The notes under the pieces are model-generated. The model was not told where the DNA came from. It saw nothing but the letters and a program-made list of their open reading frames with translations, and did no database searches. 64,000 nt of DNA from positions 1 to 64,000 of IMG/VR virus record IMGVR_UViG_3300044638_006750. One strand, written 5' to 3'. The position numbers and the translations under genes are program-made. Position 1 is the stretch's first letter, and each line of letters opens with the position of its first letter. Below are positions 20,169 through 44,380 of this stretch, piece after piece.

Positions 20169-21119
20169 TTAGATGGCGTTGGCGAACTGCAATGCAGTGT
20201 CCAATGCCTTGGAGTTGTCGTTCGCATTCTGGCCGAACCAGAGCGAGTCGAGCCGGTTGTCCGACGTGCGACCCTTGCTGTAGTTCAGGTATTCGTTGAA
20301 ACCGTTGTAGGCAGCCCACCACGTTCCACGAACCCCAACCGCAGCCTGCTTCGGACCTTCGACGAGAGTAAGGATCTCGTCCATGATATTGCGGGTGCGA
20401 GTCTTGATCTCCTCGTCCGCAGTACCTTCGATGCCCAGCAGTACCTTGACATACCGACGAACGTCGGCCTGATTGAAGTTCTTCGACGCGAGGAACCGAT
20501 ACTGTTCAGCAGTCGCTTCGAACTCCGCATTGATGTTGTCCATAATGTCACGGACTTGTTCCAGATTGGTCTTGCTGGAGCGGGTGTGACGAATACGGAT
20601 CAGTTTGCTGCCGCTATGCTTGCTGTGAGCAGCGGCGAGCGTGTTGACGCACACAACCCGGATCGGCGTATAGCCGACACGAATGGCGGTTGTGCCGTCG
20701 TGACTGTTCGACAGCAAAATGAACTTGCAAACCTCGTCACCCTTGACGATTTCGCTATTGTCACGGTTGAGTTGGGCAAGCACCCAAACCTTCTGGCCGC
20801 TATGCAGCGAACCGGCAGTGTGCAACTGGCACTCGCCAGCGTCAAGAAACGGCTGGAACCAATCGAACGCATCGCTGTTTTGCAGCGGAGTGTATCGCGG
20901 ACCAACAACCCCCAGAATAGAGTTATCAGTCTTGCGGTACGTTGCACGGGCGGGAACGGGCGTCCCCTCTTGGGTAAACAGGTCTTTCAGACCAACTTCC
21001 CAATCCAGACCAGCGGCGGTAATCGCCTCCGAAACAGTGGGAGCCTCATCCAACTGGTTCCCCAGACCGTGCCACGGGGTCGCACCAACAAACATCATCT
21101 TTTCAACAGCAGCAGGCAT
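20169..21119 (-). CDS. DUF932/DUF945 phage-plasmid protein (TIGR03299-like)
   Basis: PWHGLG, AGLDWEV, LGVVGPRYTPLQN, LLSNSHDG, TPIRVVCVNTL, GTWWAAYNG. Confidence 0.9.
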   Translation of the reverse strand: MPAAVEKMMFVGATPWHGLGNQLDEAPTVSEAITAAGLDWEVGLKDLFTQEGTPVPARATYRKTDNSILGVVGPRYTPLQNSDAFDWFQPFLDAGECQLHTAGSLHSGQKVWVLAQLNRDNSEIVKGDEVCKFILLSNSHDGTTAIRVGYTPIRVVCVNTLAAAHSKHSGSKLIRIRHTRSSKTNLEQVRDIMDNINAEFEATAEQYRFLASKNFNQADVRRYVKVLLGIEGTADEEIKTRTRNIMDEILTLVEGPKQAAVGVRGTWWAAYNGFNEYLNYSKGRTSDNRLDSLWFGQNANDNSKALDTALQFANAI

Positions 21120-21222: not shown

Positions 21223-21300
21223 TAAGTCGTTGTGGCGTAAGCACTTACGTTCAGCCGGGGCGCCCCGCCTGATCCTAAGTCCTTGGCGGACTTGGATTTA
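21223..21300. repeat. 78-bp element, copy 2
   Basis: TAAGT-N15-ACTTA-N28-TAAGT-N15-ATTTA. Confidence 0.9.
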
Positions 21301-21781
21301 GGAATGGGGTCTTGTAGCGTTGTTGAAACATTTTGGCTGTTTCTGTAGTGTACGCACATTCATCTGGAATATAGCAATACAATCCATTACATATTGCTTT
21401 GGGATTATCTTCGTATATAGCTTGACGAATCCATTTGAAAGTATCCCCAGAACAAATAAGATCATCTACTACAATATATCTAAAAGGAGAAACTCCTTCA
21501 ATATAAAAATCGCTGTATCGTTTTTCGTCTGGCTTACGAATAACTACAATATTTTTATTTAGCAGTTCTGCTATCTGAGGAACCACCATCAGTCCGCTTA
21601 CACCACAGCAAGCAATACTATCAAATGTATTAGCGATTGGTCGCAAATCACAAACTGCTTTGATAATAATCTTATTCCGGTTCTTGTGGTTCAAAACTCG
21701 ACACGTATGACTAGCACCCTGAATAATCTTGCCATCATCAGTGCGACGAACATCTTCTATAGATTGATTCATAAGATTCAT
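21275..21781 (-). CDS. Type I phosphoribosyltransferase-like protein
   Basis: CGVSG; VIRK; IVVDDLICSGDT PRPP motif. Confidence 0.8.
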   Translation of the reverse strand: MNLMNQSIEDVRRTDDGKIIQGASHTCRVLNHKNRNKIIIKAVCDLRPIANTFDSIACCGVSGLMVVPQIAELLNKNIVVIRKPDEKRYSDFYIEGVSPFRYIVVDDLICSGDTFKWIRQAIYEDNPKAICNGLYCYIPDECAYTTETAKMFQQRYKTPFLNPSPPRT

Positions 21782-21784
21782 AAA

Positions 21785-21864
21785 AACGGATGGTACGATT
21801 CGAACGTACTAGAAAGAAAGGAATAAAGAGATGATAATAACTTGTCCCACCAAGTTGCATCCGT
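21785..21864 (-). ncRNA. tRNA-like RNA with the anticodon arm replaced by a CU-rich single strand
   Basis: Acceptor ACGGATG/CATCCGT; D-like arm ACTTG-GTGGGA-CAAGT; T arm GTACG-TTCGAAT-CGTAC. Confidence 0.7.
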
Positions 21865-21875
21865 CCGAGAGAAGA

Positions 21876-22097
21876 TCAATCGTCAAGTTCGTCAATGTCA
21901 GAGTAGTAACTCTGGAACTCTGTATTGTATGGTTGACTCTCGTCATCATCAGCGTCAGTCATCCATGCTTCATCGGTTCCATCGTCATAGTAGATTTCAT
22001 CTTCAATATAATCAGCATCTTCGGCTAGATTGTGGTAATCGTATTCGTAATCATTCTCTCTCATAATCAACTCTCCTTTGATACCATCATACACCAA
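21876..22097 (-). CDS. Small, very acidic protein
   Basis: D/E/Y-rich; AAGGAGAG RBS before the internal Met (MRENDY). Confidence 0.65.
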   Translation of the reverse strand: MVYDGIKGELIMRENDYEYDYHNLAEDADYIEDEIYYDDGTDEAWMTDADDDESQPYNTEFQSYYSDIDELDD

Positions 22098-22115
22098 TCA
22101 GCCGCTTTTGTCAAG

Positions 22116-25534: not shown

Positions 25535-25806
25535 GCATTGCTATTATAACATAACCCACTCAACGCCGCAAGCCCCCGTGGCGTCCCACGGAGGCATTTG
25601 CGGTTTTATGGTGTTATCGGCTACCATCTCCATAAGTAATATACTCTAGAAGCCCAATAACTTCAAGGTCACCATCCTATTATTGGCTGGTTAGGCTCTT
25701 CTAGGTTGCACCTTTAAGTCTTGCAACGGACTATCATTACGCGGGAGTTATCCCGCCGCACTATGCCTAAAATCTATTTATACTGGCATAGTCCAGTTTG
25801 TTGATG

Positions 25807-26094
25807 TTAGGCGATTGCCTCCTCCTTGGCAACCTTGCCATCGTGAGCGTCACCAGCCTGTTCGGCAGTTACGCCAGTGACGCGGGCACGCCACACCTTA
25901 TAACCTTGCTCGCTAAACGCCTTGACCTCACCAGCCTTGACATTAGCGTGAATGTCGCTGGACAGCGAACCACTCAGGCACTCACGAATCGAATCAACAA
26001 CACTGTCACGATCCAGTTCGTCCGCAACAATATCAACCGCAAAAGAAAACTTCTTCATAGTAATCAACCTTTCCAAAAGTGTTACAGTTACCAA
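25807..26094 (-). CDS. Hypothetical protein
   Basis: GAAAGG RBS before the internal MKKFSF; probable start near 26058. Confidence 0.65.
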   Translation of the reverse strand: MVTVTLLERLITMKKFSFAVDIVADELDRDSVVDSIRECLSGSLSSDIHANVKAGEVKAFSEQGYKVWRARVTGVTAEQAGDAHDGKVAKEEAIA

Positions 26095-27636: not shown

Positions 27637-28930
27637 TGTCTCGCACCAATTCTATATACTTGTTCACAAGTTCAGGAGCTGATATCTCATGCAGCCCAAT
27701 CAATTCTTTAACCTTGTTTCTCTGAGCATTACTCATTGCACTCATACGAGAGTTAAGAAAATTCAGAACATAGATAATGGCTTGCTCACGATTCATATCA
27801 CAAGCTTCCACAGTATTTAAGTCTCTAAAGTTTTTAGCCATTAGGATAATCCTCTGGGTAGTCTTTTGCAGGCTTAATCGGTCTGCTCATCACACCATCA
27901 TCTGGCATCCACCACGGAGCATCCATTCGGTCAACCAAGCCGGGAGATTCATGACAAAAAATCAGATGTGGACTGAACGGATCATTCTCAGAATAAGAAT
28001 ACTCTCCAGCCCACACGCCAATATGCTCACCATAGTACCAGATACCCTGCCCGTGCTCTGGTTGCTTCTCAAAGAAACTAATCCATTCCATCAGGAAGTC
28101 TCCTCAGTATTTCCATCCATCAGCTTATTAAATACATTCTCCTGCATCTTCATAAACTGTTTCTGATTGCCCCAATACTCTCCGCGTTCCATATTCTCAC
28201 ATACCAGATTATACAGATAGTTCAGTTCGGTTTTGGTCAGTTCAATCGTTGTAGTTTTCATTACCAATTCTCCGGCATAGGAATCTCACCAAAACTAGTA
28301 TAGCATACGACGCCATGACTGTCAATCTTCATGGTTCCCTCATTAACAAAGGGCGTCCATTCTGGCAAACCATCGTCAAATTCACCATGCGTCCACTGCC
28401 CCCATCCACCCCTATCCTTATCCCACATAAGAACCATAGGACAATCATATCCAGCAACGCAACACAGATACTCATCATCTATAATAGGATCGCCATAATG
28501 CCAATTCATTTTACTTTCTTCTTTTTCTTCTTCTTAGGCTTACTAGGCAACTTAGTCTCTATCTCAATCTCTTCTATTCTAACCGGTCTTAGCGTATTGT
28601 CCATAGCATCAAACCATGCTTCGGCAATCTTTCTGGTTTTACAGACCATCTGGGTTTCTTCATGGATACAACCAGCCCCATACTCACAGATAATAGCGTA
28701 ACCTTTCATTTTCCCCTCCCAATAATCAAGCACTTCTCACCCTTATCTCCATCCATATGGCTCACAGACTCATGAGGACCATAATACCACCTATCCTTAT
28801 CGTTCACATTGAAAACAATCTCGTCAGTCTTCAATCCGACATCATTATATCCACCCTCATATCCAAGCGTAAGAACCCGCATATCGGACGGATAGTTCTT
28901 CAACTGCTCAATAAACTCTGCAATGGTCAT
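27629..28930 (-). CDS. Operon of small hypothetical ORFs (28706-28930, 28506-28733, 28261-28509, 27834-28091, 27629-27841)
   Basis: Coupled ORFs behind a sigma70-like promoter at about 28948-28976. Confidence 0.7.
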
Positions 28931-29011
28931 GATCTCTCCTTTTCCAGCATTCTACCATCTATTTTCTATCTGTCAAGAGTATTAAAATACCGGCTGTTAA
29001 TGGATCGACTT

Positions 29012-29084
29012 ACCAGATAACAGGATTCGAACCTGTAACTCCTCTCATCTCTGAGTGGAACTCTGCCATTTGAGTTATATCCAG
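29012..29084 (-). ncRNA. tRNA-like RNA or pseudo-tRNA with a GAGA-tetraloop stem instead of an anticodon loop
   Basis: D arm ACTC-AAATGGCA-GAGT; T arm ACAGG-TTCGAAT-CCTGT; middle TCC-A-CTCA-GAGA-TGAG-A-GGA. Confidence 0.6.
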
Positions 29085-29456
29085 CGATAGTTTTACGATT
29101 AATGTCCGGTATCACGCATTAACCAACCACAGACCGTCATTTGGTGGTTTCTATCCGACCCCTGTTTGTAACCAGCGAATCTTTTACGCCCCGATTCTAT
29201 AACCCACCAATACTCCGATATTATGAACCCTTGGAGCAAGGTAAACACTGGTGGAAACCGTCCACGGAAATCCTCCCTGCAAATAAGGTGGTATTGCGCA
29301 TATAACCCTATTTGGTCTGGCTCTTGGAACGGTTACTGGTTGTTTGGTATCCGGCTGTTGTTTCAGTGATTCTACCCGATGAAAGATAAAATGCAAGCGC
29401 ATTGTTGCAGTGTTAATTCACTCTATTACCCGATGAAGGATAATACCGGATTGTAT

Positions 29457-29594
29457 TGGAGCGTGACCAAGGATTCGCACCTTAGTAGATTGGTATACTA
29501 TCCTAACGTATAACCCCGTTAGGCAACCCCACGCTGCATAACAGACCGTAGGTTTATCGTACAGGTTATCCCAATCTAGTCGCTAGACTCACGC
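29457..29594 (-). ncRNA. tRNA-like RNA with a pseudoknotted insert, copy A
   Basis: GCGTGA/TCACGC acceptor plus TCCA end; T-like arm TAAGG-TGCGAAT-CCTTG; insert closed by TAGATTGG/CCAATCTA. Confidence 0.72.
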
Positions 29595-29601
29595 ATTATA
29601 T

Positions 29602-29743
29602 TGGTCGTAATGAGGACGCCATCCCCCATAGATTAGCATTACTATACAACGTATAAGCCCGTTGTCAACCCCATCTCTGCCGAGACATGCGGGGTTTATC
29701 GTAATGGCTTATCCTAATCTAGTCCCGTCGCATGGACCTACGA
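29602..29743 (-). ncRNA. tRNA-like RNA with a pseudoknotted insert, copy B
   Basis: TCGTAG/TTACGA stem plus CCA; GTCC/GGAC arm; insert closed by TAGATTAG/CTAATCTA; covaries with copy A. Confidence 0.7.
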
Positions 29744-29836
29744 AAGTTTGTTTTGTCTTACTCAATCATTCTACATCTATTATCGTCACTTGTCAAGAGC
29801 CATCTGTAGGAATTCCAAAAATTTTTTGTATTGATG

Positions 29837-29914
29837 TAACCCTATGATACACAAGCACTTACGACAAACTCGGCGGGCCACCCTCGTCCTAAGTACCCTT
29901 GGGCAAAGCACTTA
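29837..29914. repeat. 78-bp element, copy 7
   Basis: TAACC-N15-ACTTA-N28-TAAGT-N15-ACTTA. Confidence 0.9.
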
Positions 29915-29929
29915 GGGCGAAGGGACGAT

Positions 29930-30409
29930 CTAGGCGTTTACTTCCTCATCGTCTTTGAAAAACTCCTGCATATCATACTCGTTCCACAATGCTACAGGAA
30001 TCATATCCTTACTATTGTAGTCGCAGTAGTTATCAGCACCATTATCCCATATACCACAGAAAGCCATCCCCGGTTCCCAATAGGTTGCTCGTACATTATA
30101 TCCTAATTCTACAAGTTTCTCATATAAACCGACAGGAGGACTCCAGGCACTATCAAAAGAGCAACAAACCTCGTTATCAACCCTAGTGGCTTTCAAACCA
30201 TATCGTTCCTCTTTTTCTGTGCCAACATCGGCCCCAATATCCCACTTGGTTCCCCAGTTGTTGATTTGCCAGTTATACCAATCTTCGCCCTCCGGCAACG
30301 GCAAAAACTCACTACAAGCCTTACCTAGATTGTAGGCTTTCTCAAACCTATCAACCATATCCTTATTAGGATGGGAAACCGTCAACTTGTTCATGCACCA
30401 GTTAGGCAT
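29930..30409 (-). CDS. DUF1281/Api92-like ferredoxin-fold protein
   Basis: MPNWCMN, WYNWQINNWGTKWD, FDSAWSPP, YWEPGMAFCG. Confidence 0.8.
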   Translation of the reverse strand: MPNWCMNKLTVSHPNKDMVDRFEKAYNLGKACSEFLPLPEGEDWYNWQINNWGTKWDIGADVGTEKEERYGLKATRVDNEVCCSFDSAWSPPVGLYEKLVELGYNVRATYWEPGMAFCGIWDNGADNYCDYNSKDMIPVALWNEYDMQEFFKDDEEVNA

Positions 30410-31121
30410 ATAAACCTTTCAGTTTAGGGTTGTGGTCAATGCTTCATAGCGAGCATCACGCTTGGCTGCTTCCAAAGCCTTGCAGAAAAACTGATGAAAG
30501 TCATCCAAGTCAGCATGAATCTCTTGCTCTGTTTTGCCAATAGAAAGAATCATTCTCATAGCAAAAGCAGCGACATGATCCGCAATCAGACTCTTTTCTT
30601 CTTCAGACAGGCTCATTTTTTACCTCTTTAGCGTCAGCGATCCAATCCCCAATATACACTCGTTCTACAAACAATCTATCGCCATACTTCATGTTAGCCA
30701 TACGTATAGCGTCCCATTCGCTAAACGCTTTGACATATCCAACCAGCCGACAGTCTTTGACCACGGCCCAAGTATACATTGTCATTCATCTTCCTCCACG
30801 CCCCCAAACATCTCATCCCACGTTTCTGCGTCAATACCGGTCATGAGAATCTCACGATCATCGGCATTGAGATACGGGAAGCAGTTTTGAATCAAACCGC
30901 CATTCAGCCATTCGTTAGCATCACTCAGTTTTGTGGTAATGCTAAACGGACGACCACCCACACTGATACCGCTAAACACCACATCGTCACCGACAACATT
31001 TCGGTCAACCGCATCAGTCATAGCATATCGAGTCAACATCTTTTTTCTCCTTGTGTTCACCGATTCTATCATGTATTATCGGCTTGTCAAGAGGAAAAAC
31101 CTTAGAAAAAGTTTCGCTATC

Positions 31122-31199
31122 TAAACCCTTGTCGGATAAGGACTTACGTCATGCGGGGCGGCGCGGCCTTACCCTAAGTGCTGCAATAGCAACACCTTA
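31122..31199. repeat. 78-bp element, copy 8
   Basis: TAAAC-N15-ACTTA-N28-TAAGT-N15-CCTTA. Confidence 0.9.
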
Positions 31200-31221
31200 G
31201 GGCTTGGCTCGACATTTGATA

Positions 31222-31629
31222 CTAGAACATCATCGCGGCCAAACCGCTCTTGAACAAAGCACCAGCCAGCAAAGGTCTACGACAGTTGGTAGTACGCTCT
31301 GCGTAGAAGTTACGAACACTGCCATTCGGCATCTTGCAAGTAACAAGATGACTGGTACGCACAAACTGCGGATCATTACGACGATACGCACTACGGGTAT
31401 TCAGTCTTCGGATACTTGCACTGTCCAGAGTATGAACATCCAGAACCTTAGCAAGATAACGCTCAGGATCGCCCTTTGCGGGCTGTTCATAAACAAAGTT
31501 ATACACTTCGCCAACCTTTGCTGTACTCAGTGATCCATGCACACCACCGTACACAGAATACGTCAGGAATGCAATCACAGCAGTAGCAACAACAACAATA
31601 CCACCAATCACAAACGTCAAATCGCTCAT
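31222..31629 (-). CDS. Membrane-anchored hypothetical protein
   Basis: N-terminal TM helix; GAAAGGG RBS; own promoter. Confidence 0.7.
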   Translation of the reverse strand: MSDLTFVIGGIVVVATAVIAFLTYSVYGGVHGSLSTAKVGEVYNFVYEQPAKGDPERYLAKVLDVHTLDSASIRRLNTRSAYRRNDPQFVRTSHLVTCKMPNGSVRNFYAERTTNCRRPLLAGALFKSGLAAMMF

Positions 31630-31763
31630 ATCAACCCTTTCGTTAGAAAAACTAGAACCACAACTCCAACCATTCTACATCTATTATCGTCATTTGTCAA
31701 GCGGAAACTTTAGAAATCTATCCCGTTCAGTTGCGTAAGGCTTGTCCTCTTGTTCTATATCTA

Positions 31764-32324
31764 TTATCGACCAACAGTACCTACCTTCTTTAGAGAATTT
31801 GGGTAGAACTTGAAAAAATCTCGAATGTCGTCGTTGTATGCCATATTGGCATTATCACAAGTCGCATCAAAATAGAGATAATACCCGCTATCTTGTCGAG
31901 TCAGATTTTGCGTATACTTCTTGACATGCTTTTGCTCACTCCATTTTGTCACTAGTCCATTAGGAGTAATAAAAATCATGAACAAAATATCGAAACATTC
32001 AGGCTTGACACCACTGAAAACGCAAATGCTCTTGGAGCCTTTCTTGGTGTGTTTGGGAAACATCTTAGCAGTCTTGACTTCGCAACGAATGTTGTCGTTC
32101 AAAAGAATGTCAAAAGATTTCGTACCACCATGCCTCTTGACATCATATCCGTTTTGACGCAGCCGACGAGCCATCAGTTTCTCGCCGCATTGACCAATAG
32201 CATACGGGTCAAGACGAGAAAGAGTATACGCTAACTTGTTCAGTTTGGGGCAAAAATAGGTTTCCGGCTCCAAACACTTGATTCCGTTCTTGATCTTATG
32301 AAAGTCACGCATCGTGAACATCAT
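31764..32324 (-). CDS. PD-(D/E)xK nuclease-like protein
   Basis: GEKLM...FDILL...CEVKTA. Confidence 0.65.
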   Translation of the reverse strand: MMFTMRDFHKIKNGIKCLEPETYFCPKLNKLAYTLSRLDPYAIGQCGEKLMARRLRQNGYDVKRHGGTKSFDILLNDNIRCEVKTAKMFPKHTKKGSKSICVFSGVKPECFDILFMIFITPNGLVTKWSEQKHVKKYTQNLTRQDSGYYLYFDATCDNANMAYNDDIRDFFKFYPNSLKKVGTVGR

Positions 32325-32403
32325 TATTCTCCTGTAGTTATGGCTATTCTACAAGAGTATCGGCTATTGTCAATAGATTTAGTGAAAAAATTATTTTTTG
32401 TTC

Positions 32404-32481
32404 TAAACCTATGGCAGATAAGAACTTACGACAAATCGGGCCGCTCCGCCTCACCCTAAGTGCTTTAGGGATAAGGCTTTG
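32404..32481. repeat. 78-bp element, copy 9
   Basis: TAAAC-N15-ACTTA-N28-TAAGT-N15-CTTTG. Confidence 0.9.
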
Positions 32482-32985
32482 CGTTCACTCAAAATCCACA
32501 AAAATAACCTGATTATATCCACGAGGCTTGATGGTTAGGCTCTCACCATAGTCATAGGTGTCAGCCTTTACGTTTGTCATACCAACAGCTTTCTTCGCGT
32601 AATATGTAATAGTACGCTGTGAGGCTTCATTGGGTAGATCAAATCCATATCGGTTAACCCAACCATAATTAGCTTCACCACCCAGCGTATCAGTAATTAT
32701 CACATTCACCTTCATCTCCAAACTCCTTATGTTCAAATACAAGATCGCTCATCAAATAGGATACCAGAATCCCAGCAGCCATACCCAAACCGAAAATCAC
32801 ATAACCATCCATGGCTCTTTTCCTTTTAGTTTATAAGATAGGTTGCCACACAACCGCCCAAAAAACTCGCCAGAAACAAGATTTTCTCACTGAAACTCAT
32901 GCTTGCACCATTCTACTTTAGAAAGATTATTCTGTCAAGTGCTGACTACAAGCCATTGTAGCCGAATCCGAAGGATTAGCAGAGA

Positions 32986-33156
32986 CTACCAGCCATCTCC
33001 TATTGCCTTTCGATTGTTCGCCCCGCGAGTCCGAAGACGCTTGGGACGGTTATCGTGCTTACCACTACCTCCAAGGTGGGGGTTGTGACCTTTGCCTATT
33101 TCCCATACTTGACGCACGTTCAATACCAACACCATGTTTTTCTTGCGTTTGCTCAT
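32986..33156 (-). CDS. 56-aa basic protein (absent from ORF track)
   Basis: MSKRKKNMVLVLNVRQVWEIGKGHNPHLGGSGKHDNRPKRLRTRGANNRKAIGDGW; directly behind a promoter. Confidence 0.65.
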   Translation of the reverse strand: MSKRKKNMVLVLNVRQVWEIGKGHNPHLGGSGKHDNRPKRLRTRGANNRKAIGDGW

Positions 33157-33218
33157 GTTCTTTACTCTACCATATTATCGACCAAAGTCAAGCACAACCT
33201 GTAAGAATTTTTTTGTCA

Positions 33219-33296
33219 TAAGTCATTGGCAGCAAAAGACTTAGAACTAATCCGAGCGGCCCCGCTTGCCACAAGTGCTGTAGCAGCAAGGGTTTA
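33219..33296. repeat. 78-bp element, copy 10
   Basis: TAAGT-N15-ACTTA-N28-CAAGT-N15-GTTTA. Confidence 0.88.
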
Positions 33297-33545
33297 CGAT
33301 CAGAAATCTCCAACAGTATTCAAGCGTACAGGCTCGCTCTTGAATGAACATACATTCAGTCCACTAGCAGCCACAACAGTATCGAACATGATACCGAGAA
33401 ACTCCTGCCTTTCAACTGCTGTACTCATATCATGTTCTGGCAACTCTAACAGAAACTCACGATCAACGGCAATCTCATCACCATTATCATTCTCTACGAG
33501 AATATCATAGAAGCGATGCGTGTTCATACTGTGCTCTCCTTGGGT

Positions 33546-33866
33546 TCAATCGTAGTAGGGGCCATCTTCGTTGTAATCAACATAACCGATTGCATCATCG
33601 GCATGGAAATCCTCTCGGTCATCTCCGTAGTAGCCGTAATCCTCATCTGTTCCCCAACCGCATGACGCAAGGCCGGACTCGTGATCTCCGTCCATATCAT
33701 CATTAATATCCTCATCAACCCAGTCCACCTCTCCACTATTATCATCCTCGTCGTAAAAGTCGTTGTAATCGTCATAGTTAGAATCTTCTTCGTCGCCAAC
33801 GTAGGCCATGTCATCGTCCTCATAAGCGTTATCGGGATCGAACAGGGGGTCAGGGTGACTCATCAT
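33546..33866 (-). CDS. Extremely acidic protein (DGDHESGLASCGWGTDEDYG)
   Basis: D/E-dominated; AG-rich RBS; own promoter. Confidence 0.75.
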   Translation of the reverse strand: MMSHPDPLFDPDNAYEDDDMAYVGDEEDSNYDDYNDFYDEDDNSGEVDWVDEDINDDMDGDHESGLASCGWGTDEDYGYYGDDREDFHADDAIGYVDYNEDGPYYD

Positions 33867-34170
33867 CTTCCTCTCTTTCTTGTATCGGCAGTCTACCAGA
33901 AAAACTTTAGGCTGTCAAGCCCTACCAGCCGTTTCGGCGATATTCTTCTCGGAGTTCCTCTTCTTCACGACGCTGACGATCATTCACAGGAGGGCCATAT
34001 CCCAGATCATATGCTTCTCGCGCAGCATCATATCCATCATCAGAATCTTCGTCATTCCATTGGTCGTATCGACTCATCTTTCACTCTCACTTTCTCTACT
34101 TCTTATATCGTCAAGTCTAGCATCTCAACTTTAGCCTGTCAAGAGAAAATCTAAAAATTTTTTGTTGACG

Positions 34171-34248
34171 TAAACTGTTGAGACATAAGGACTTACGTTT
34201 CGCGGGGCCGGCCGGCCTCACCGCAAGTGCTTATGCGGCAAGGCTTTG
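34171..34248. repeat. 78-bp element, copy 11
   Basis: TAAAC-N15-ACTTA-N28-CAAGT-N15-CTTTG. Confidence 0.88.
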
Positions 34249-34915
34249 CGTCAAACCGTAAACTCTACGTCCGGTTCGATCTGGTCACTAATCCCCACCA
34301 CCTCAGCCCAATCGTAAAAATCGACTTGGACACTAGGATCATCAATCGGCTCAACCATCGGCTCAAGAATACCCTGCTCTGCCATCTCGTCAAGGATCCG
34401 GTTTACTGCGTCGAAATCCAGCATACTGTTTTCCTTTGGGGTGGTGAGAACAAAAGCCATCATATGCGGAAAGTGTGTCATTGTCAAGCCCTTATTTCAT
34501 GAGTCTAAGAACAGCCTCCAACCTCGCAATTTCCAGCCTCAATTCAGCCACCTTGCCGAACATCCTAGCCTGTCGATAATTGTCGATATCGTATCGCAGG
34601 CTTATGATCTGATAGTTGATGGTTTCGCGTGTCATGGTCTTCCTTTCTCTAATCTAGTCTACACTCGGCCGTCCTACTTGTCAATACGCTTCTCAAAAAT
34701 TGTGTCCAAATAAATCTCTTTTTCACTGACCACCCATCCATACTCACAACGAGGGGTATACACACCAATATAGACTTTCCCTTTTTCGACTCCCTCAAAT
34801 CCCAGACCATAACCGAACAACCCAGCCAGAAATATCATAGAGAACATAAAAGGTTCCTTTCTATGTATATTATCGGCTAATTCCCGCTAACATCTTTAGC
34901 ACAAATAATTTCACC

Positions 34916-34993
34916 TAAATCCCTATCCTGCAACAACTTACGACCAGCCGGGGCGCGCCCCTGCATCGTAAGTCTTTACGTCGCAAGGGTTTG
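34916..34993. repeat. 78-bp element, copy 12
   Basis: TAAAT-N15-ACTTA-N28-TAAGT-N15-GTTTG. Confidence 0.88.
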
Positions 34994-35091
34994 CGTCAAT
35001 TTTTGTTATTGTAGAACGGACTGATTACACAATAGGCAAAACCGACATATCCGATGATGAACATTAAGGCACTGAACATTTTATAGTCTTT

Positions 35092-35928
35092 CTATTTACA
35101 GGGTTGCAGATCGTATAGGGAACAGTGGACAGTCCTACCGTCATCATACTGTACTGATGCCCAAGCATCTTTTGTACCATAAATCTCATCGGCCAAGACA
35201 CCCATGAAACATTTCACCACAACCTTTTGACCGTCCAGCATCACAGTATCCCCGTATCGAGGGGTGTGTTCAGCAGTAAACATTTTTAGTTTTCGTCCTT
35301 CCATGCAAATGGGCTGATTTCTTCGCCATATGCCGTAATGGCTTCGTACTGAGCCTTCAACGCTTCCACACGCTCTTTGCTGCCCGGCTTGCCAACCTTC
35401 ACGATCATGGTATCGTCTCCACCAATAAGCCGAGGATCGGCCTTCTCGACACGAATTTTGCCGAGCCGACGCAGTGCTTTCCGATTGAACTTCAAAACCT
35501 TTTCAGAAACCACATACCGCTTCTGGTCTGCAACTCCGTAAACGTAGTCGGTATCTTCGGTGATTCGATCATCGGGAATCTCTACCAGCATGGGAATCGC
35601 GATACCCTTGAAAACCATACGGGCCTGACGCTTGGCGTTCTCAATAATGGCAAACTTCGTTTTCATCTTTGTCTCTCTTTCTTGTGTGTGGATTCTAGCA
35701 ACCTGTCTACCGCTTGTCAAGCCCTCAAATCTTCCAGTGGGAGAACTTCAGGGTGAACACTTGTCCAGGGTACTTGCTTGCGATGTACGCTTCGGCGGTT
35801 TCCTTCCGATTGTCGGTAGCCGAAACACCCTGAACCACCTTACCGTCGATGATGACGCTCCAGATTCGACGCTTGCGAATCTTCGGCAGGGAAGCGATGA
35901 AACTGTTGACGCTAGTGACCTTTTCCAT
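35092..35928 (-). CDS. Hypothetical early ORFs (35725-35928, 35286 to about 35666, 35092 to about 35284)
   Basis: AG-rich leaders (AGAAAGAGAGA...ATG). Confidence 0.7.
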
Positions 35929-36052
35929 CTTTTCTCTCTCTTTCTTTCTCTTATATCGACATTATACCATGGATTCTTGAGGTTGCAAGAGAAATCTAGA
36001 AATTTTTGTGTCAAGATTTTTTGACAAAACTTTTGCCTGCTTTTTGAGCATT

Positions 36053-36068
36053 TGGCATACTATTTGCT
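36053..36068 (+). promoter_or_regulatory. sigma54-type -24/-12 motif
   Basis: TGGCATACTATTTGCT (GG-N10-GC). Confidence 0.55.
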
Positions 36069-36077
36069 AGTGCGTCA

Positions 36078-36155
36078 TAAGTTCTTGTGGCTTAAGCACT
36101 TACGTCAAAATTTGCCCGCCCTCCTCGTTGTAAGTCTATATGCGGCAAGCAGTTA
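36078..36155. repeat. 78-bp element, copy 13
   Basis: TAAGT-N15-ACTTA-N28-TAAGT-N15-AGTTA. Confidence 0.9.
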
Positions 36156-36912
36156 CGATTAGTTTTCGCGTCCTACATACCAAGTTTTCCCACTATCGTC
36201 TTTCATTTTTTTCCACCCCATTTTCGCAAAATACCTATCTTGAAGATAGTTGTCAACAAGCCTAAATGTTTGCAAGAAAATCCACCAACCAACCGTAGAG
36301 CCAACAAACCAAGCCCCAATAAACCATATTGCCAAGGTTGCCCACATCTCCACCTCTGCTTCACTCATGTTTCCCCTTTCGGTTTAGGATACGCCCATCC
36401 AAGAAGCGTTTTCACAACAATAATCGTAGAACATATCGTTCAGAACTTCTTCATAGTTCTTATCTTTCAAGAGCCTACGGTCAAGGGTTGAGTCACACTC
36501 AGCATAAAACTTACCCTTTCCTACTTCAAACACAATCGTACAGGCATGAGCCTCACTACCCCAAATCCTAGCCTTAGCATCCACAAACTTCTTCAACATC
36601 TTTTTCTCTCTTTCTTAGTACGATTCTAGTAGATGGTTTCAATGTTGTCAAGCCCCACAAGCCACTTCCCACTCATGGGGCATATAGCCTTTTTGCAGTT
36701 CGGTTGTGCTGCACTCGCATTGCACACCGGCCAGATCGACCACCCATACATCACCCTCGTCGAAGTACCAATCAACAATCTTTCCAGTGATTCCACCAAG
36801 CCGAACCTTGTCACCAATCTCGTACATTCTAGCCTTTCTTTCTTGTTGCCTGTATTCTATACATCTATTATCGACTTGTCAACAGTGAAAACTGAAGAAA
36901 TTTTTTTAGACT

Positions 36913-36990
36913 TAAAGTGTTGGTGTGTAAGTAGTTACGTCAAATCGGAGCGGCCGGCCTCGCCGTAAGTTCTTTACGGACAAGGCTTTA
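36913..36990. repeat. 78-bp element, copy 14
   Basis: TAAAG-N15-AGTTA-N28-TAAGT-N15-CTTTA. Confidence 0.88.
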
Positions 36991-36992
36991 TG

Positions 36993-37292
36993 TCAACCCA
37001 CAACCATACGGTCTTCAAACGGTGTACCATCGTTCAGGTACCACTCATAGTTCTTCTGGTATACCTGTACGGGTGAATACTGGTTGATACGCTTCTTCGT
37101 GGTGTGTGTACGCCATCCACCACTATTCAGCATCACAGTATCATCGGGATAGATTACTACAACATTCGTACCGTGCAACTCGATTGCAACGCTACCATCT
37201 GCTTGAATGTAGGCATAGGTGTTGTTGCCAACCTTTCGTTGTCCACGATTACGCTTACCCAAAACCATCTTCGTTGCTTCTGCGTGTGTCAT
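36993..37292 (-). CDS. Phage hypothetical protein (LHG...LNSGGWRT.TTK.RIN family)
   Basis: Motif recalled from phage early proteins (unverified); stop abuts the element. Confidence 0.7.
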   Translation of the reverse strand: MTHAEATKMVLGKRNRGQRKVGNNTYAYIQADGSVAIELHGTNVVVIYPDDTVMLNSGGWRTHTTKKRINQYSPVQVYQKNYEWYLNDGTPFEDRMVVG

Positions 37293-37703
37293 TTTTTCTT
37301 TCAGTTAAAAAGGTTTTCCAGCCATTCACGATACATCTCGCCCATCGCACAAAAAACTTCATGCAGAATATAGGTGAGTCCTGCACATGCACACAGTAGA
37401 GCCAAATCCACAAAAGTCATTTCTTTTTCCTCTTTGGAGAGTCTAGTATATCGTCTCTCGCTGGTCCTGTCAATACTCTCCACAATCTTCGACAACTTCT
37501 TCTCCAATCACTTCGCAGTGTTCGCAGCACTTCGGGCAAATACCATAATCCACTTGGGCGAAGGTCATCTCACAGCCGCAGCAATCCGAAGTGAAGTAGA
37601 CCCGAATGACGTTTTCCATGGTTTTCCTTTCCTCTTGTGTTGTGTCTATTATACTTATCGGCATATTCCTGTCAATACCTTAAAAAGATTTTTATACAAG
37701 CCA

Positions 37704-37781
37704 TAAGTGGTTGTCAGATAAGCACTTACGTCAAACGCGGCGCGCCCCGCTTTTCGTAAGTCTTTATGGGCTAAGGTTTTA
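37704..37781. repeat. 78-bp element, copy 15
   Basis: TAAGT-N15-ACTTA-N28-TAAGT-N15-TTTTA. Confidence 0.9.
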
Positions 37782-38371
37782 CGTTATAGAGCGGATGCTC
37801 TCCCGATACCTGAACCGCAGTTCAGTAGCAGCAGCCCGAATCACCTCGCATAGCACCTCTTTTAGAGCACCCTTCGCATGGGGGAGTTGAAGCTGTGCCT
37901 CACGCAGAGTCAACTGAATCGTGCTGGTTTGCATAGTGTCGAATGATGGCTGAAAATAGCTGGTATTCATCTGTTCTCTCTTTCTGTGGTTGTATCCTAC
38001 CGTATCCACGCTTGGCTGTCAAGTCGTGTAGGCATTGGTAAGCCGATGATACTTAGCCCACAACTCATCTACCACGAACTGCACAACCCGATCATGAGAA
38101 CCACGGCAAACGTAGTATCCCATGTGAATGTCGAACAGGGCATACGTCCCATCCGTTTGGGGGTGGAACGTGAAGCCACACTTGTAGGCGTAGGCGTTGA
38201 TCTTACCCTTGATCGTCGAAGTCTTAGGAGGCTTTCTCATTTTCTTCTCTCTCTTTCTCTCTTACTTCTTATATCGACATTATACCAGCCCCTACTTGAG
38301 TTTGCAAGAGAAAAATCTAGATTTTTATGTCAAGAAATTTTGACAAAATTTTTCTGTATTTTGAGTATGTT

Positions 38372-38387
38372 TGGCACACCAATTGCT
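38372..38387 (+). promoter_or_regulatory. sigma54-type -24/-12 motif
   Basis: TGGCACACCAATTGCT (GG-N10-GC), near consensus. Confidence 0.6.
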
Positions 38388-38396
38388 ATATCGTCA

Positions 38397-38474
38397 TAAC
38401 CCTATATCTCATAAGTACTTACGTCGAATCCGAGCCGCCCCGCTAGTCGTAAGTCTTTATCAGATCACCACTTA
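38397..38474. repeat. 78-bp element, copy 16
   Basis: TAACC-N15-ACTTA-N28-TAAGT-N15-ACTTA. Confidence 0.9.
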
Positions 38475-38476
38475 GG

Positions 38477-38578
38477 TCACATGTGGTCATTATAGATTAT
38501 TTCGATCTGCCTAAACACATAGAACAACAGCATAGTGATGGTGGAAGCAAAACACAGGTCGATAATCAGCCTAATCAT
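38477..38578 (-). CDS. 33-aa membrane peptide (absent from ORF track)
   Basis: AAGGAG RBS; MIRLIIDLCFASTITMLLFYVFRQIEIIYNDHM; stop abuts the element. Confidence 0.6.
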   Translation of the reverse strand: MIRLIIDLCFASTITMLLFYVFRQIEIIYNDHM

Positions 38579-38630
38579 GAGCAACTCCTTTTTCGGTATT
38601 CTACACTATGGATTCTGAACAATCAAGCCC

Positions 38631-39391
38631 TTAGCAAGCGTAGATAAAAACTTTTTCATTCACACAACGATTACTAATCGTCACAATCCAATTCTTTCCG
38701 CTTCCGTCTTCTCTCATGATGCTATTCACCAGCCCGCAGTGAGCGTTGCCCTTGGGGTCGATCACACCAATATACTTACCAGCAGTCATAGCAGCGAAAA
38801 TCTTGCTCAGGTTGTTGTTGTGCTTGGTCATGTTCTTTTCTCCTTAGTGATTGTATTCTATAAGATTATTCTAGGCTGTCAATACTGTACGCTTGTTTAG
38901 AGAATCGTACCATCACCACGAATACGATACATGATACCGCCGATACTGTACAGAACAATACCCTCTCCGAGATGCTGAACAAACGTAGCCGAGTAGCCGT
39001 GTCGAGCAACCAACCGTCGAACCGTATTTTGCACTTGAATCGTCATTTTATTTCTCTCTTTCTTATACGTATATTCTATCAAGATTTTTTAGCGTGTCAA
39101 TACTGATCAGTAGTACAGTCCGTCAGCAACCACCTCACCGTTCTCATTCACCTCGATAAACTCTCCCTCATCGCCCATCGGGAAAAAATACTGAATATAT
39201 CCGTACTCGTCGTTCAGAGCCTCTTCGAGCAACTCGCCACCGATGCGAGCAATCCCAACCAAGGTATCGGGAGAAGTGCTATCCGCACCGTACAGGAACT
39301 CAACCAACTCGTCTCGGGTGTTCAAGGTAACCATTTTTATCATCTCCTCTTGTGTTGAACGTATTATACATATCGGCTTTTCTCGTGTCAA
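38631..39391 (-). CDS. Three small ORFs, each behind its own sigma70-like promoter (39107-, 38897-, 38631-)
   Basis: TTGACA and TAGAAT/TATAAT at about 39363-39391, 39073-39100 and 38855-38882. Confidence 0.7.
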
Positions 39392-39423
39392 TACCTTAGA
39401 AAAAAATTTTTCTGTAATTATCC

Positions 39424-39501
39424 TAAGTCCTTATTTATCAAACACTTACGAACAATCGGGCGGATTAAAATCGTCGTAAGTACTTATGCCCCAACAACTT
39501 A
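39424..39501. repeat. 78-bp element, copy 17 (right edge)
   Basis: Perfect TAAGT-N15-ACTTA-N28-TAAGT-N15-ACTTA; contains TATCAAACACTTA. Confidence 0.92.
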
Positions 39502-39619
39502 GGGGGGTTTTTCTGTTTTAGTAAGGATATCGGCGTTTTTTGTGTCGAGGCGGCGGTGGTGCAAACATAGTAGGGGGCTATTATATGAATATGTACTACC
39601 TAAACCTTAAAGGTTGCCC

Positions 39620-41215: not shown

Positions 41216-41276
41216 GGTCGTGTCCTTACGAAAAGTTATGATAAATCTGAACTTCTCGCAATTTATCAGAAAAATT

Positions 41277-41708
41277 TCAGGTGTCAATCGGATTTAAAAT
41301 CATATGCATTCCACCGTCAATAAAGCCAATTTTGCCATAAAAATCCACAAGATTAGGATTACAATTTAACTTAACCTTATAGCACTTATTCCTTTTTGCC
41401 ACCCGAATACAATGATCCACAATTTCTTTTCCGTATCCTTTTCCTCGTTGTGATGGATGAACGCCCACATCCTCAATATGACAACACAACTGATTATATC
41501 TTAACTTACATTCCATAATAGTTGAGGCCGTAGCCACAATATTATCTTCTACCAAACCCACCCACGTTAAAATATTGGTTGGTCTCGACTCTAAAGCAAA
41601 TTTAATACTTTCCTCATTAGATAGTGAGACCCCGCTATTATTTAGCGAGGCCACACATTCTAAATACTGAGAGATATTATCAGAAGGCTCTAATATTTTG
41701 ATATCCAT
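41277..41708 (-). CDS. GNAT, glucosamine-6-phosphate N-acetyltransferase (GNA1-like)
   Basis: HIEDVGVHPSQRGKGYGK; CYKVKLNC; FYGKIGF; next to glmS. Confidence 0.8.
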   Translation of the reverse strand: MDIKILEPSDNISQYLECVASLNNSGVSLSNEESIKFALESRPTNILTWVGLVEDNIVATASTIMECKLRYNQLCCHIEDVGVHPSQRGKGYGKEIVDHCIRVAKRNKCYKVKLNCNPNLVDFYGKIGFIDGGMHMILNPIDT

Positions 41709-42009
41709 AGTTCCACATCGGATAATTTGGGATAACATTTACATAAGTTCTCTGACAACCAAAAATGCACCTTCTTTCCTGCACAACATAATTAACATAT
41801 GGAGGAGCAACATATAAAGGAGCAGCTACCACAGGATTATAATAGTAATAGGTTGTTACCGGTTGATAGACCGTACTATAGACTGGAGTTACAACTGTTT
41901 GAGGAACATAAGTAGTAACAGGCACAACAACCTGCTGACCATAAACAGAGCTACAACAAAACACTAATACTAAACTTAATAACAGATTCTTCATAGAGAT
42001 TCCTTTCAT
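41680..42009 (-). CDS. Secreted Val/Pro/Tyr-rich small protein
   Basis: Signal peptide followed by VVPVTTYVP-type low complexity. Confidence 0.6.
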   Translation of the reverse strand: MKGISMKNLLLSLVLVFCCSSVYGQQVVVPVTTYVPQTVVTPVYSTVYQPVTTYYYYNPVVAAPLYVAPPYVNYVVQERRCIFGCQRTYVNVIPNYPMWNYGYQNIRAF

Positions 42010-43832: not shown

Positions 43833-43845
43833 TCCTTGTGCCTAT

Positions 43846-44193: not shown

Positions 44194-44380
44194 AAAGTGT
44201 ACAAAAAAATATTATAGTCTATACTAACTACTGGAGAGGAAACTCTTATGAGCAATTTTGACGATATTAAAATAGTACCATCAGTTCTTGATGTTAAAGC
44301 TTTTGCTACAGAAGATGGCATTGTCACCCAGGAAGAACTACAACTAGAAGAAGGAAAAAGTATAGCAGAGCTTTTACAAG

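What the first reader, a model, noticed from the sequence alone, without database searches (positions are those of the whole stretch)
21785..21864. tRNA scaffold displaying an antisense to the phage's own early-gene leaders
Seen: a perfect 7-bp acceptor stem, a D-like hairpin and a canonical T arm, but the anticodon arm is replaced by unpaired UAUUAUCAUCUCUUUAUUCCUUUCUUUCUA. That tract is the complement of an AG-rich leader plus AUG. The mRNA leader of ORF 35928 (AGAAAGAAAG-AGAGAGAAA-AGAUG) pairs 10+5 nt perfectly with it. Similar leaders precede genes starting at 33866, about 35666, 36599, 38240 and about 39046. Inference: a tRNA-stabilised antisense RNA that shuts off early or host translation initiation. 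Alternatively it is a cis element, because the PRTase ATG (21781) starts only a few nt after its 3' end.
Basis: partly seen in the sequence, partly recalled or inferred. Interest (0 to 1): 0.8.

Follow-up and report, generated by a model that had tools for sequence, protein, structure and literature searches.

The report
Phage tRNA-shaped RNA displaying anti-RBS tract
A family of freshwater jumbo phages carries one conserved tRNA-shaped RNA whose anticodon arm is replaced by an exposed pyrimidine tract that matches the tail of 16S rRNA and pairs with ribosome-binding sites; it is a real, undescribed RNA, but its function is still inferred.

Summary
Window 21864..21785 (minus strand) folds into a 7-bp acceptor stem, a D-like hairpin and a canonical T arm. 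A 30-nt unpaired CU-rich tract stands where the anticodon arm should be.

Eighty-seven related phage loci carry exactly one copy each, always between a small acidic ORF and a phosphoribosyltransferase (PRTase) gene. Across 51 distinct sequences, 99.5% of base-pair cells pair and 14 of 17 pairs show compensatory changes. ARAGORN and Rfam 15 do not recognise the element.

The tract is more than pyrimidine-rich. The octamer UCCUUUCU occurs in 40 of 51 sequences, against about 1 expected. It equals the last 8 nt of many bacterial 16S 3' tails and is complementary to the family's commonest RBS words (GAAAGG, AGAAAGG).

However, the tract does not co-vary with leaders across 25 genomes, and its anti-AUG triplet is already lost in the closest relative.

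The PRTase ATG lies 3-4 nt after the acceptor stem in 42 of 60 variants. This points to excision by the tRNA-processing enzymes.

Best reading (about 0.35): a tRNA-derived RNA cut out of an early operon, whose exposed tract pairs with purine-rich ribosome-binding sites. No expression data could be obtained.

The parts
22086..22114 (-). Sigma-70-like promoter (TTGACA-N17-TATGAT) overlapping the 3' end of tRNA-Lys. It drives the operon: acidic ORF, tRNA-like element, PRTase.
21876..22064 (-). Small, very acidic ORF (62 aa) with SD AAAGGAG. It is the conserved upstream neighbour of the element.
21865..21875 (-). CU-rich 5' flank (UCUUCUCUCGG) between the stop codon and the acceptor stem. This would be the RNase P leader. 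It is CU-rich in most clades and U-rich in others.
21858..21864 (-). Acceptor stem, 5' strand (ACGGAUG).
   Evidence: 6 of 7 pairs show compensatory changes
21840..21857 (-). Invariant C8, a variable base, then the D-like hairpin ACUUG-GUGGGA-CAAGU. The loop GGUGGGAC is almost invariant.
21810..21839 (-). Unpaired 30-nt pyrimidine-rich tract in place of the anticodon arm and variable loop.
21815..21822 (-). Conserved core octamer UCCUUUCU. It is present in 40 of 51 distinct family members, against 1.1 expected from composition.
21793..21809 (-). T arm GUACG-UUCGAAU-CGUAC with a canonical T loop (U54 U55 C56 R57 A58) and an invariant closing G-C pair.
21786..21792 (-). Acceptor stem, 3' strand (CAUCCGU).
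21782..21785 (-). Discriminator U plus UUU. No CCA is encoded, as in the phage's genuine tRNAs.
21275..21781 (-). Type I phosphoribosyltransferase-like gene (168 aa) with no SD. It starts 4 nt after the acceptor stem.
35926..35960 (-). Candidate target: all-purine leader plus ATG of ORF 35928. It follows the promoter at 35988-35961.
36825..36853 (-). Candidate target: leader containing AGAAAGAAAGG (11 nt perfectly complementary to the tract), plus the ATG at 36827.
33864..33889 (-). Candidate target: leader AAGAAAGAGAGGAAG plus the ATG at 33866.
38238..38278 (-). Candidate target: long purine leader plus the ATG at 38240.
36597..36622 (-). Candidate target: leader AAGAAAGAGAGAAAAAG plus the ATG at 36599.

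Best explanation
The element is a tRNA-derived small RNA gene at the downstream edge of the phage's tRNA cluster. It is co-transcribed from an early sigma-70-type promoter with the acidic ORF and the PRTase gene.

Proposed mechanism:
1. The element keeps exactly the parts that RNase P, RNase Z-type 3' processing and the CCA-adding enzyme recognise. These are the 7-bp acceptor stem stacked on the T arm, and the D-loop/T-loop elbow. It is therefore most likely cut out of the operon transcript like a tRNA.
2. Excision yields a stable RNA of about 80-95 nt. It also leaves a PRTase mRNA with only a 2-3-nt leader.
3. The payload is the single-stranded pyrimidine tract that replaces the anticodon arm. 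Its conserved core UCCUUUCU copies the 3' end of many 16S rRNAs. It would therefore base-pair with extended purine-rich ribosome-binding sites (AGAAAGGA and relatives), competing with the ribosome for them.
4. In the window the best partners are the all-purine leaders of a dozen promoter-proximal genes at 33.9-39.1 kb. This would give delayed translational repression of those genes, and possibly of host mRNAs.

Shown: the fold, its conservation, its single-copy synteny, the conserved octamer, the complementarity and the spacing.
Inferred: excision, stability, pairing in vivo, and any effect on translation.
For: Structure and family:
- The three helices have 99.5% pairing, and 14 of 17 pairs show compensatory changes.
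- A covariance model finds exactly one copy in the window (84.5 bits) and one per locus in 87 loci (72-98 bits). Genuine tRNAs are the next-best hits, at 25-40 bits.
- The T loop is UUCGAAU or UUCAAAU, and the D loop contains the GG of a tRNA elbow.
- No CCA is encoded, as in the phage's own tRNAs.
- N73 is U in 45 of 60 variants, usually followed by U.

Payload:
- UCCUUUCU occurs in 40 of 51 distinct tracts, against 1.1 expected. The helices around it have changed sequence several times.
- The same 8 nt end the mature 16S tails of Listeria, Streptococcus, Neisseria and Deinococcus (PMC6288834).
- The commonest words in 482 family leaders are GAAAGG, AGGAGA, AAGGAG, AAAGGA and AGAAAG.
- In several clades a short stem closes the tract into a loop, or a covarying extra hairpin precedes it.

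Pairing:
- Real tracts beat composition shuffles in 25 of 25 genomes.
- In the window, 10 of the 28 best ATG-start partners fall in the 5.4-kb early cluster.

Precedent: engineered tRNA scaffolds with the anticodon arm replaced are processed and stable in bacteria (PMC3753655).
Against: - No expression or processing data exist. No RNA run holds the window. The one metatranscriptome contig that matches a relative covers only the PRTase ORF.
- There is no genome-specific co-variation between the tract and early leaders, or between the tract and the acidic gene's own leader. A first weak signal (p = 0.02) was not replicated.
- Any contiguous CU run pairs with purine-rich RBSs, so the complementarity is generic.
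- In about half the family, the 5' part of the core is predicted to pair with an AAGGA just upstream. This would mask part of the proposed seed.
- The element has no promoter or terminator of its own.
- Five relatives lack it yet keep the PRTase gene.
- The host, and hence its 16S tail, is unknown.
Confidence: 0.35

Rival explanations
1. Cis-acting punctuation only. The tRNA-like fold is a processing signal, like tRNA punctuation and t-elements in organelles. Its job is to separate the acidic-ORF mRNA from the PRTase mRNA. It gives the SD-less PRTase gene a nearly leaderless 5' end, or couples its translation to that of the upstream ORF. The excised RNA has no function of its own.
For: - The element is always in the same intergenic slot, including 12 contigs found by a DNA pattern that did not require the PRTase gene.
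- The ATG lies 3-4 nt after the acceptor stem in 42 of 60 variants.
- The stop codon of the acidic ORF lies 4-16 nt before the stem.
- The PRTase gene has no SD in any relative.
- There is no promoter or terminator between the two ORFs.
Against: - It does not explain why a 25-42-nt payload is kept, with a conserved octamer (40 of 51 against 1.1 expected) and in half the family a covarying extra hairpin.
- A bare acceptor/T minihelix would be enough for processing.
- Relatives without the element still have an SD-less PRTase start, so the gene does not depend on the element.
Confidence: 0.25
2. Decoy or sponge. The exposed tract acts as a stable copy of the 16S 3' tail, or simply as a pyrimidine-rich single strand. 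It would titrate a protein that binds or cuts such RNA. Candidates are ribosomal protein S1, a factor that binds the anti-SD tail, or a defence endoribonuclease that cuts pyrimidine motifs or anticodon loops.
For: - The core octamer is identical to the last 8 nt of common 16S tails.
- The element sits inside a tRNA cluster of the kind phages are thought to carry against tRNA-targeting defences.
- No co-variation with mRNA leaders is seen, as expected if the partner is a host component.
Against: - No candidate partner protein lies next to the element.
- The PRTase is an ordinary type I PRTase fold rather than a PyrR-like RNA binder.
- The anti-SD core CCUCC itself is not copied.
- Precedents such as MazF toxins cutting UCCUU in 16S rRNA and phage RNA mimics of antitoxins are recalled from memory and were not tested here.
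Confidence: 0.15
3. Cis feedback on the upstream gene. The tract folds back onto the ribosome-binding site of the acidic ORF on the same transcript and limits its translation.
For: Within the operon, the acidic gene's RBS is the best partner of the tract in most relatives: 46 of 102 top-two sites fall there. In the L020, L029 and L050 clades, 9-12 contiguous pairs are possible.
Against: - There is no co-variation between the tract and the same genome's acidic-gene leader. Own-genome mean is -13.3 kcal/mol against -13.0 permuted (p = 0.12).
- In the window itself only about 6 contiguous pairs form (-10.4 kcal/mol).
- The RBS is simply the most purine-rich site in the operon.
Confidence: 0.08
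4. A decaying tRNA pseudogene with no function.
For: ARAGORN and the Rfam tRNA model do not call it. It lies at the edge of a tRNA cluster.
Against: - Compensatory changes occur in 14 of 17 pairs across relatives whose PRTase proteins are only 55-60% identical.
- The D and T loops are invariant, and the octamer is conserved.
- A decaying gene would not keep these features.
Confidence: 0.02

Closest known systems
Canonical tRNA (Rfam RF00005)
   Same: It shares the 7-bp acceptor stem stacked on a 5-bp T stem, the T loop UUCRAAU, the closing G53-C61 pair and a D loop with GG. It lies in a tRNA gene cluster and, like the phage's own tRNAs, encodes no CCA.
   Different: It has no anticodon arm, C rather than U at position 8, a 5-bp D stem with a 6-nt loop, and no conserved aminoacylation identity elements. 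It scores below threshold with ARAGORN and Rfam.
Engineered 'tRNA scaffold' for recombinant RNA (Ponchon and Dardel; PMC3753655)
   Same: The architecture is the same: acceptor stem, D arm and T arm are kept, and the anticodon stem-loop is replaced by a payload. The scaffold is recognised by cellular processing enzymes and protects the payload.
   Different: This one is natural. The payload is unstructured rather than a hairpin, and the element is embedded in an operon next to a start codon.
tRNA-like processing signals: mitochondrial tRNA punctuation, plant mitochondrial t-elements, mascRNA from MALAT1, gammaherpesvirus 68 tRNA-miRNA units (from general knowledge)
   Same: These are tRNA-shaped modules inside longer transcripts. 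RNase P and RNase Z cut them and so define the ends of the neighbouring RNAs.
   Different: They are eukaryotic or organellar, and they carry no conserved single-stranded payload. Processing of the phage element has not been shown.
SD-targeting bacterial small RNAs with C/U-rich seeds (RsaE/RoxS, RNAIII and other Rsa RNAs with UCCC motifs; from general knowledge)
   Same: They present an unpaired pyrimidine motif that mimics the anti-SD, pairs with ribosome-binding sites and blocks initiation.
   Different: Those RNAs are independent transcripts with their own terminator, and their seeds sit in hairpin loops. None is tRNA-shaped, and none is known from a phage tRNA cluster.
Phage T4 stable RNAs 'species 1 and 2' (rnaC, rnaD) in the T4 tRNA cluster (recalled from memory, details uncertain)
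   Same: They are small stable RNAs of unknown function, encoded and co-processed with phage tRNAs.
   Different: No sequence or structural similarity was tested. They are not described as carrying a pyrimidine tract.
T4 RegB endoribonuclease (functional analogy only; from general knowledge)
   Same: It is a phage device that switches off early mRNAs by attacking their Shine-Dalgarno regions.
   Different: It is a protein nuclease that cuts GGAG, not an RNA that pairs.
tmRNA tRNA-like domain and bacterial Y-RNA-like YrlA
   Same: They are tRNA mimics that keep the acceptor/T-arm elbow but lack a normal anticodon arm.
   Different: The element has no tag ORF, no pseudoknots, no Ro-binding stem and no G3-U70 pair. 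ARAGORN and Rfam find no match.

Membership tests
tRNA (RF00005) | Cloverleaf with an anticodon stem-loop | tested here: not met
   The region between the D and T arms is an unpaired 25-42-nt tract, or a short non-anticodon hairpin plus tract.
tRNA (RF00005) | Detection by tRNA finders or the Rfam model at threshold | tested here: not met
   ARAGORN does not call it in the window or in 10 relatives. Rfam gives no tRNA hit, even at E<=10 on 131 nt.
tRNA (RF00005) | 7-bp acceptor stem, 5-bp T stem, T loop UUCRAAU, GG in the D loop | tested here: met
   A model built from the family picks real tRNAs as its next-best hits, at 25-40 bits.
tRNA (RF00005) | U8 and conserved aminoacylation identity elements | tested here: not met
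   Position 8 is an invariant C. Pair 3:70 is G-C in 50 of 51 sequences. N73 varies among U, A, C and G.
tmRNA | tRNA-like domain plus tag reading frame and pseudoknots | tested here: not met
   ARAGORN, which also searches for tmRNA, finds none, and Rfam gives no hit. The element is only about 80-95 nt.
Any Rfam 15 family | Score at or near a family's gathering threshold | tested here: not met
   The best hit on the element is 18 bits against a threshold of 80, for an unrelated sRNA on the opposite strand.
tRNA-like processing signal (punctuation / t-element kind) | tRNA-shaped module inside a polycistronic transcript, flanked closely by mRNAs | tested here: met
   There is one promoter upstream of the acidic ORF and none between the ORFs. 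The stop codon is 4-16 nt before the element, and the ATG is mostly 3-4 nt after it.
tRNA-like processing signal (punctuation / t-element kind) | Cleavage by RNase P and RNase Z at its ends | not testable with these tools
   No read-level RNA data cover the element.
Anti-SD (SD-sequestering) small RNA | Conserved unpaired pyrimidine motif complementary to ribosome-binding sites | tested here: met
   UCCUUUCU occurs in 40 of 51 tracts. The top leader words are GAAAGG, AAGGAG, AAAGGA and AGAAAG. Real tracts beat shuffles in 25 of 25 genomes.
Anti-SD (SD-sequestering) small RNA | Seed and target co-vary across relatives | tested here: not met
   Own-genome and other-genome values are indistinguishable (p = 0.28 and 0.53; p = 0.12). 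The motif and the RBS words are both conserved, so the test has little power.
Anti-SD (SD-sequestering) small RNA | Discrete stable transcript that represses its targets | not testable with these tools
   No expression data are available, and the host is unknown.

The most novel reading that the evidence does not exclude
The RNA is a phage-made, tRNA-shaped stand-in for the 3' tail of 16S rRNA. It would be released in quantity by the tRNA-processing enzymes. It could occupy Shine-Dalgarno regions across the cell and so reprogramme which mRNAs the ribosome can start on. Alternatively, it could draw off a host factor or defence nuclease that recognises the anti-SD tail. Either way, it would be a natural counterpart of the laboratory 'tRNA scaffold'.
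Probability: 0.2. Interest if true: 0.85.

Novelty: new variant of a known kind. Interest (0 to 1): 0.62.

Why it matters
Phage tRNA clusters are usually read as codon supplements or as spare parts against tRNA-cutting defences. This is a cluster member that has plainly stopped being a tRNA. It is nevertheless held under strong selection, with a payload that looks like the ribosome's own mRNA-binding tail.

If the RNA is excised and acts by pairing, it would be the first natural example of a tRNA body used as a carrier for a regulatory RNA in a bacterial virus. It would also be a new way for a phage to time or redirect translation.

If it is only a processing mark, it would extend the organellar 'tRNA punctuation' principle to phage operons.

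Either way it defines a clean, testable new RNA family: 87 members, one per genome, with well-defined ends and a short conserved motif to mutate.

Tried and rejected
- tRNA or tmRNA: ARAGORN and Rfam do not recognise the element, even on a 131-nt search space.
- Known phage DNA: megablast and blastn against 50,697 phage records match only tRNA-Thr.
- Antisense ORF: the + strand ORF 21831-22028 has a perfect RBS and ATG, but it is simply the complement of the tract. Its ATG is lost in L002 and absent in other clades. Rejected.
- 'Plus AUG' complementarity: the CAU is not conserved. Rejected as chance.
- Terminator: the only terminator-like call is the T arm itself, within chance expectation.
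- Internal promoter: none is found between the ORFs.
- Co-variation of tract with leaders: three tests were run. Against the acidic gene's own leader, p = 0.12. Against nearby leaders, p = 0.02. Against a larger matched set of early regions from 25 genomes, p = 0.28-0.79. The weak signal did not hold.
- PyrR-like autoregulation by the PRTase: the model (pLDDT 85) matches orotate and adenine PRTases best. The PRPP-binding motif is intact. Nothing suggests RNA binding.
- Host or cellular homologues: a pattern scan of 185,579 genomes gave 24 matches, and none is a member by the covariance model.
- Expression: two run searches and one read-laying run gave no coverage of the element.
- Ancestor tRNA: ungapped comparison with the nine phage tRNAs was uninformative.
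- Literature: six full-text searches found no description of such an element.

Full report
**What is there.**
On the minus strand, window 21864..21785 reads as follows:
- a 7-bp acceptor stem (ACGGAUG with CAUCCGU);
- two bases (C, A);
- a hairpin ACUUG-GUGGGA-CAAGU;
- a 30-nt stretch with almost no purines;
- a T arm GUACG-UUCGAAU-CGUAC;
- the 3' acceptor strand and a discriminator U.

The minimum-free-energy fold is exactly this three-helix shape with the middle unpaired. On its own it is only modestly better than shuffles (z = -1.9). ARAGORN finds nine tRNAs in the window but not this one. Rfam 15 gives nothing, even when only 131 nt are searched at E<=10.

**Where it comes from.**
The window is part of a 232.7-kb viral contig from a freshwater sample (L001 is identical). 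It has no DNA relatives among 50,697 deposited phage genomes, apart from a tRNA-Thr.

**Is it real?**
I used the downstream 168-aa ORF as bait and fetched 80 related viral loci whose proteins are 58-100% identical.
- In 75 of them the same element sits directly upstream of that ORF.
- The 51 distinct sequences align into the same three helices. Of the pair cells, 99.5% are standard pairs, and 14 of 17 pairs show changes on both sides.
- The covariation score is 0.555 against 0.20 ± 0.01 in shuffles (0 of 500 reach it). Controls with slid partners pair only 30-42%.
- RNAalifold predicts the same structure unaided.
- The acceptor stem occurs as ACGGAUG, GUGGAUG, GUGUGUG, AUGGACG, GCGGAUG and UUGAGUG, each with its matching partner strand. 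The D and T stems vary in the same way.
- The D loop (GGUGGGAC), C8, the T loop and the closing G-C pairs are invariant or nearly so.

A covariance model built from the alignment gave these results:
- one copy in the 64-kb window (84.5 bits);
- one copy per locus in 87 loci (72-98 bits);
- genuine tRNAs as the next-best hits, at 25-40 bits.

The scaffold is therefore tRNA-like by an objective measure, but it forms a clearly separate family. A decaying pseudogene is excluded.

**Context.**
The element always lies at the downstream edge of a conserved tRNA cluster (Thr, Gln, Asn, Ser ... Lys). It sits between a small, very acidic ORF and the bait ORF.

A DNA pattern scan that did not require the bait gene found 71 viral contigs, each with a single copy. 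All 12 contigs new to the set again have the bait gene immediately downstream. The same pattern gave 24 matches in 185,579 bacterial and archaeal genomes, and none is a member by the model. Five relatives lack the element (L018, L046, L048, L061, L070) but keep the downstream gene.

The downstream gene is a divergent type I phosphoribosyltransferase:
- it matches phrog_2068 at 5e-12 and gives weak adenine-PRTase hits;
- its PRPP-loop motif is intact;
- its AlphaFold model (pLDDT 85) matches orotate and adenine PRTases best, not the RNA-binding PyrR.

In the window, one sigma-70-like promoter (22114-22086) precedes the acidic ORF. No promoter or credible terminator lies between the two ORFs, and the next promoter is at 21190. 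The element is therefore transcribed inside an operon.

**The payload.**
The region between the D and T arms is 25-42 nt long. It is 73% pyrimidine overall and 79% in the last 15 nt. It is more than a pyrimidine run:
- UCCUUUCU is present in 40 of 51 distinct sequences, where composition-matched shuffles give 1.1 (maximum 6);
- UCCUUUCUU is present in 34, against 0.3 expected.

The set was collected through the protein, so it is not biased toward the motif. The motif has stayed fixed while the helices around it changed sequence repeatedly.

In about half the family, a short extra hairpin precedes the tract. It shows compensatory variants: AAGC/GCUU, AGGC/GCCU, AAUC/GAUU, AAGGA/UCCUU and GGAA/UUCC. 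In another clade, a CCC...GGG stem closes the tract into a loop.

The octamer equals the last eight bases of the mature 16S 3' tail GAUCACCUCCUUUCU. This tail is reported for Listeria, Streptococcus, Neisseria and Deinococcus (PMC6288834, Table 1). Correspondingly, the commonest words in 482 promoter-proximal leaders of this phage family are GAAAGG, AGGAGA, AAGGAG, AAAGGA and AGAAAG. This suggests, but does not prove, that the unknown host has a tail of that type. The tract is thus both a partial copy of the anti-SD tail and the complement of the family's typical extended ribosome-binding site.

The window carries an unusually dense array of TTGACA-N17-TAGAAT promoters on the minus strand: 81 in 17 kb, against 44 expected. 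About a dozen of them, between 33.9 and 39.1 kb, are followed within about 8-10 nt by all-purine leaders that run up to the ATG. Exact matches to AGAAAGRRAG cluster there.

Predicted duplexes with the tract reach -15 to -20 kcal/mol, with 10-11 contiguous pairs for ORFs 35928 and 36827. Ten of the 28 best partners among 480 ATG-started ORFs lie in this 5.4-kb cluster.

Against composition-matched shuffles of the tract in the window:
- the mean energy is better (p about 0.01);
- the top-ten mean is better (p about 0.03);
- the single best duplex is not better (p = 0.29).

Across 25 genomes, the real tract beats its shuffles every time (mean z = -1.67). Much of that reflects keeping the pyrimidines contiguous.

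- Against the acidic gene's own leader: none (p = 0.12).
- Against the few leaders near the element: a weak signal (p = 0.02).
- To follow this up I fetched 80 early-region loci with an early protein and matched 25 distinct tracts by contig to 4-22 leaders each. Own-genome and other-genome values were indistinguishable. The longest perfect complement was 9.68 against 9.56 nt (p = 0.28). The top-three energy was -16.56 against -16.58 kcal/mol (p = 0.53).

So the complementarity is family-wide and generic, not tuned genome by genome. The CAU that would pair with the AUG is lost in the closest relative. The + strand ORF with a perfect RBS at 21831 is only the mirror image of the tract and is not conserved.

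**Evidence for a cis or processing role.**
- In 60 distinct variants, the PRTase ATG lies 3-4 nt after the acceptor stem in 42 (range 1-13).
- The discriminator is U in 45, and the next base is usually U.
- The acidic ORF's stop codon lies 4-16 nt before the stem.
- None of the phage's genuine tRNAs encodes CCA, so they depend on endonucleolytic 3' processing and CCA addition. The element has the same layout.
- The PRTase gene has no SD in any relative, with or without the element.

Cutting after the discriminator would leave a PRTase mRNA with a 2-3-nt leader. A folded element would otherwise bury the start region. This supports excision by RNase P and RNase Z-type enzymes, which recognise the acceptor/T-arm stack and the elbow (established enzymology). 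It does not explain the conserved payload.

**Expression.**
No RNA run holds the window. For the commonest clade, two metatranscriptomes hold fragments. Laid on the locus, these give only cross-matches to tRNA segments and one 170-nt contig inside the PRTase ORF, with nothing on the element. These are assembled contigs, so absence means little. The question remains open.

**Conclusion.**
The element is a genuine, previously uncatalogued tRNA-derived RNA family, specific to one lineage of freshwater jumbo phages.

The account that fits the most facts has two parts:
1. The element is excised like a tRNA from an early operon transcript. This also frees the PRTase mRNA.
2. It persists as a stable carrier for a single-stranded anti-RBS tract, which can compete with the ribosome for purine-rich initiation regions.

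I put this at about 0.35. The rivals are a pure processing mark (0.25), a decoy for a protein that recognises the 16S tail or pyrimidine-rich RNA (0.15), and feedback on the upstream gene (0.08).

[quoted passage not shown] The closest natural analogues are organellar and viral tRNA-like processing signals and SD-targeting small RNAs with pyrimidine seeds. Those comparisons rest on general knowledge, not on tests run here.

Noticed in passing
window 25735-25797 (-): Rfam finds a Pistol self-cleaving ribozyme (53.7 bits, gathering score 34.5, full-length). It lies between tRNA-Arg and the ORF at 25807-26094.
   Followed up: no
window 29011-29085 (-): A tRNA gene that ARAGORN reports with a four-base anticodon 'gaga' and no amino-acid assignment. 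Rfam scores it as tRNA at only 37.8 bits. It could be a frameshift-type or otherwise unusual tRNA.
   Followed up: no
window 20169-21119 (-): The DUF932 gene is 55-56% G+C in a neighbourhood of 35-40%. It carries long spurious ORFs on both strands, which suggests recent acquisition.
   Followed up: no
window 28000-45000, mostly (-): There is a very dense array of sigma-70-like promoters, consensus TTGACA-N17-TAGAAT: 81 against 44 expected. Promoters also sit between tRNA genes and overlap them (22810, 22450, 22224, 22114).
   Followed up: partly
window 35960-35929, 38278-38241, 34113-34078 (-); also L097, L119, L144, L145: A sub-class of early leaders begins with gtcgatat(a), followed by a long purine tract. 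It is conserved in relatives, so it may be a distinct regulatory leader family.
   Followed up: partly
L007, L018, L045, L061 near locus position 4490: In some relatives the PRTase reading frame has a stop two or three codons before the window's stop (…LLNPSP*KT). The C-terminal tail is therefore variable or read through.
   Followed up: no
window 21876-22064 (-): The upstream ORF encodes an extremely acidic 62-aa protein rich in D, E and Y. It has no family match in Pfam, PHROGs or NCBIfam. It is conserved next to the element and might be a nucleic-acid mimic.
   Followed up: no
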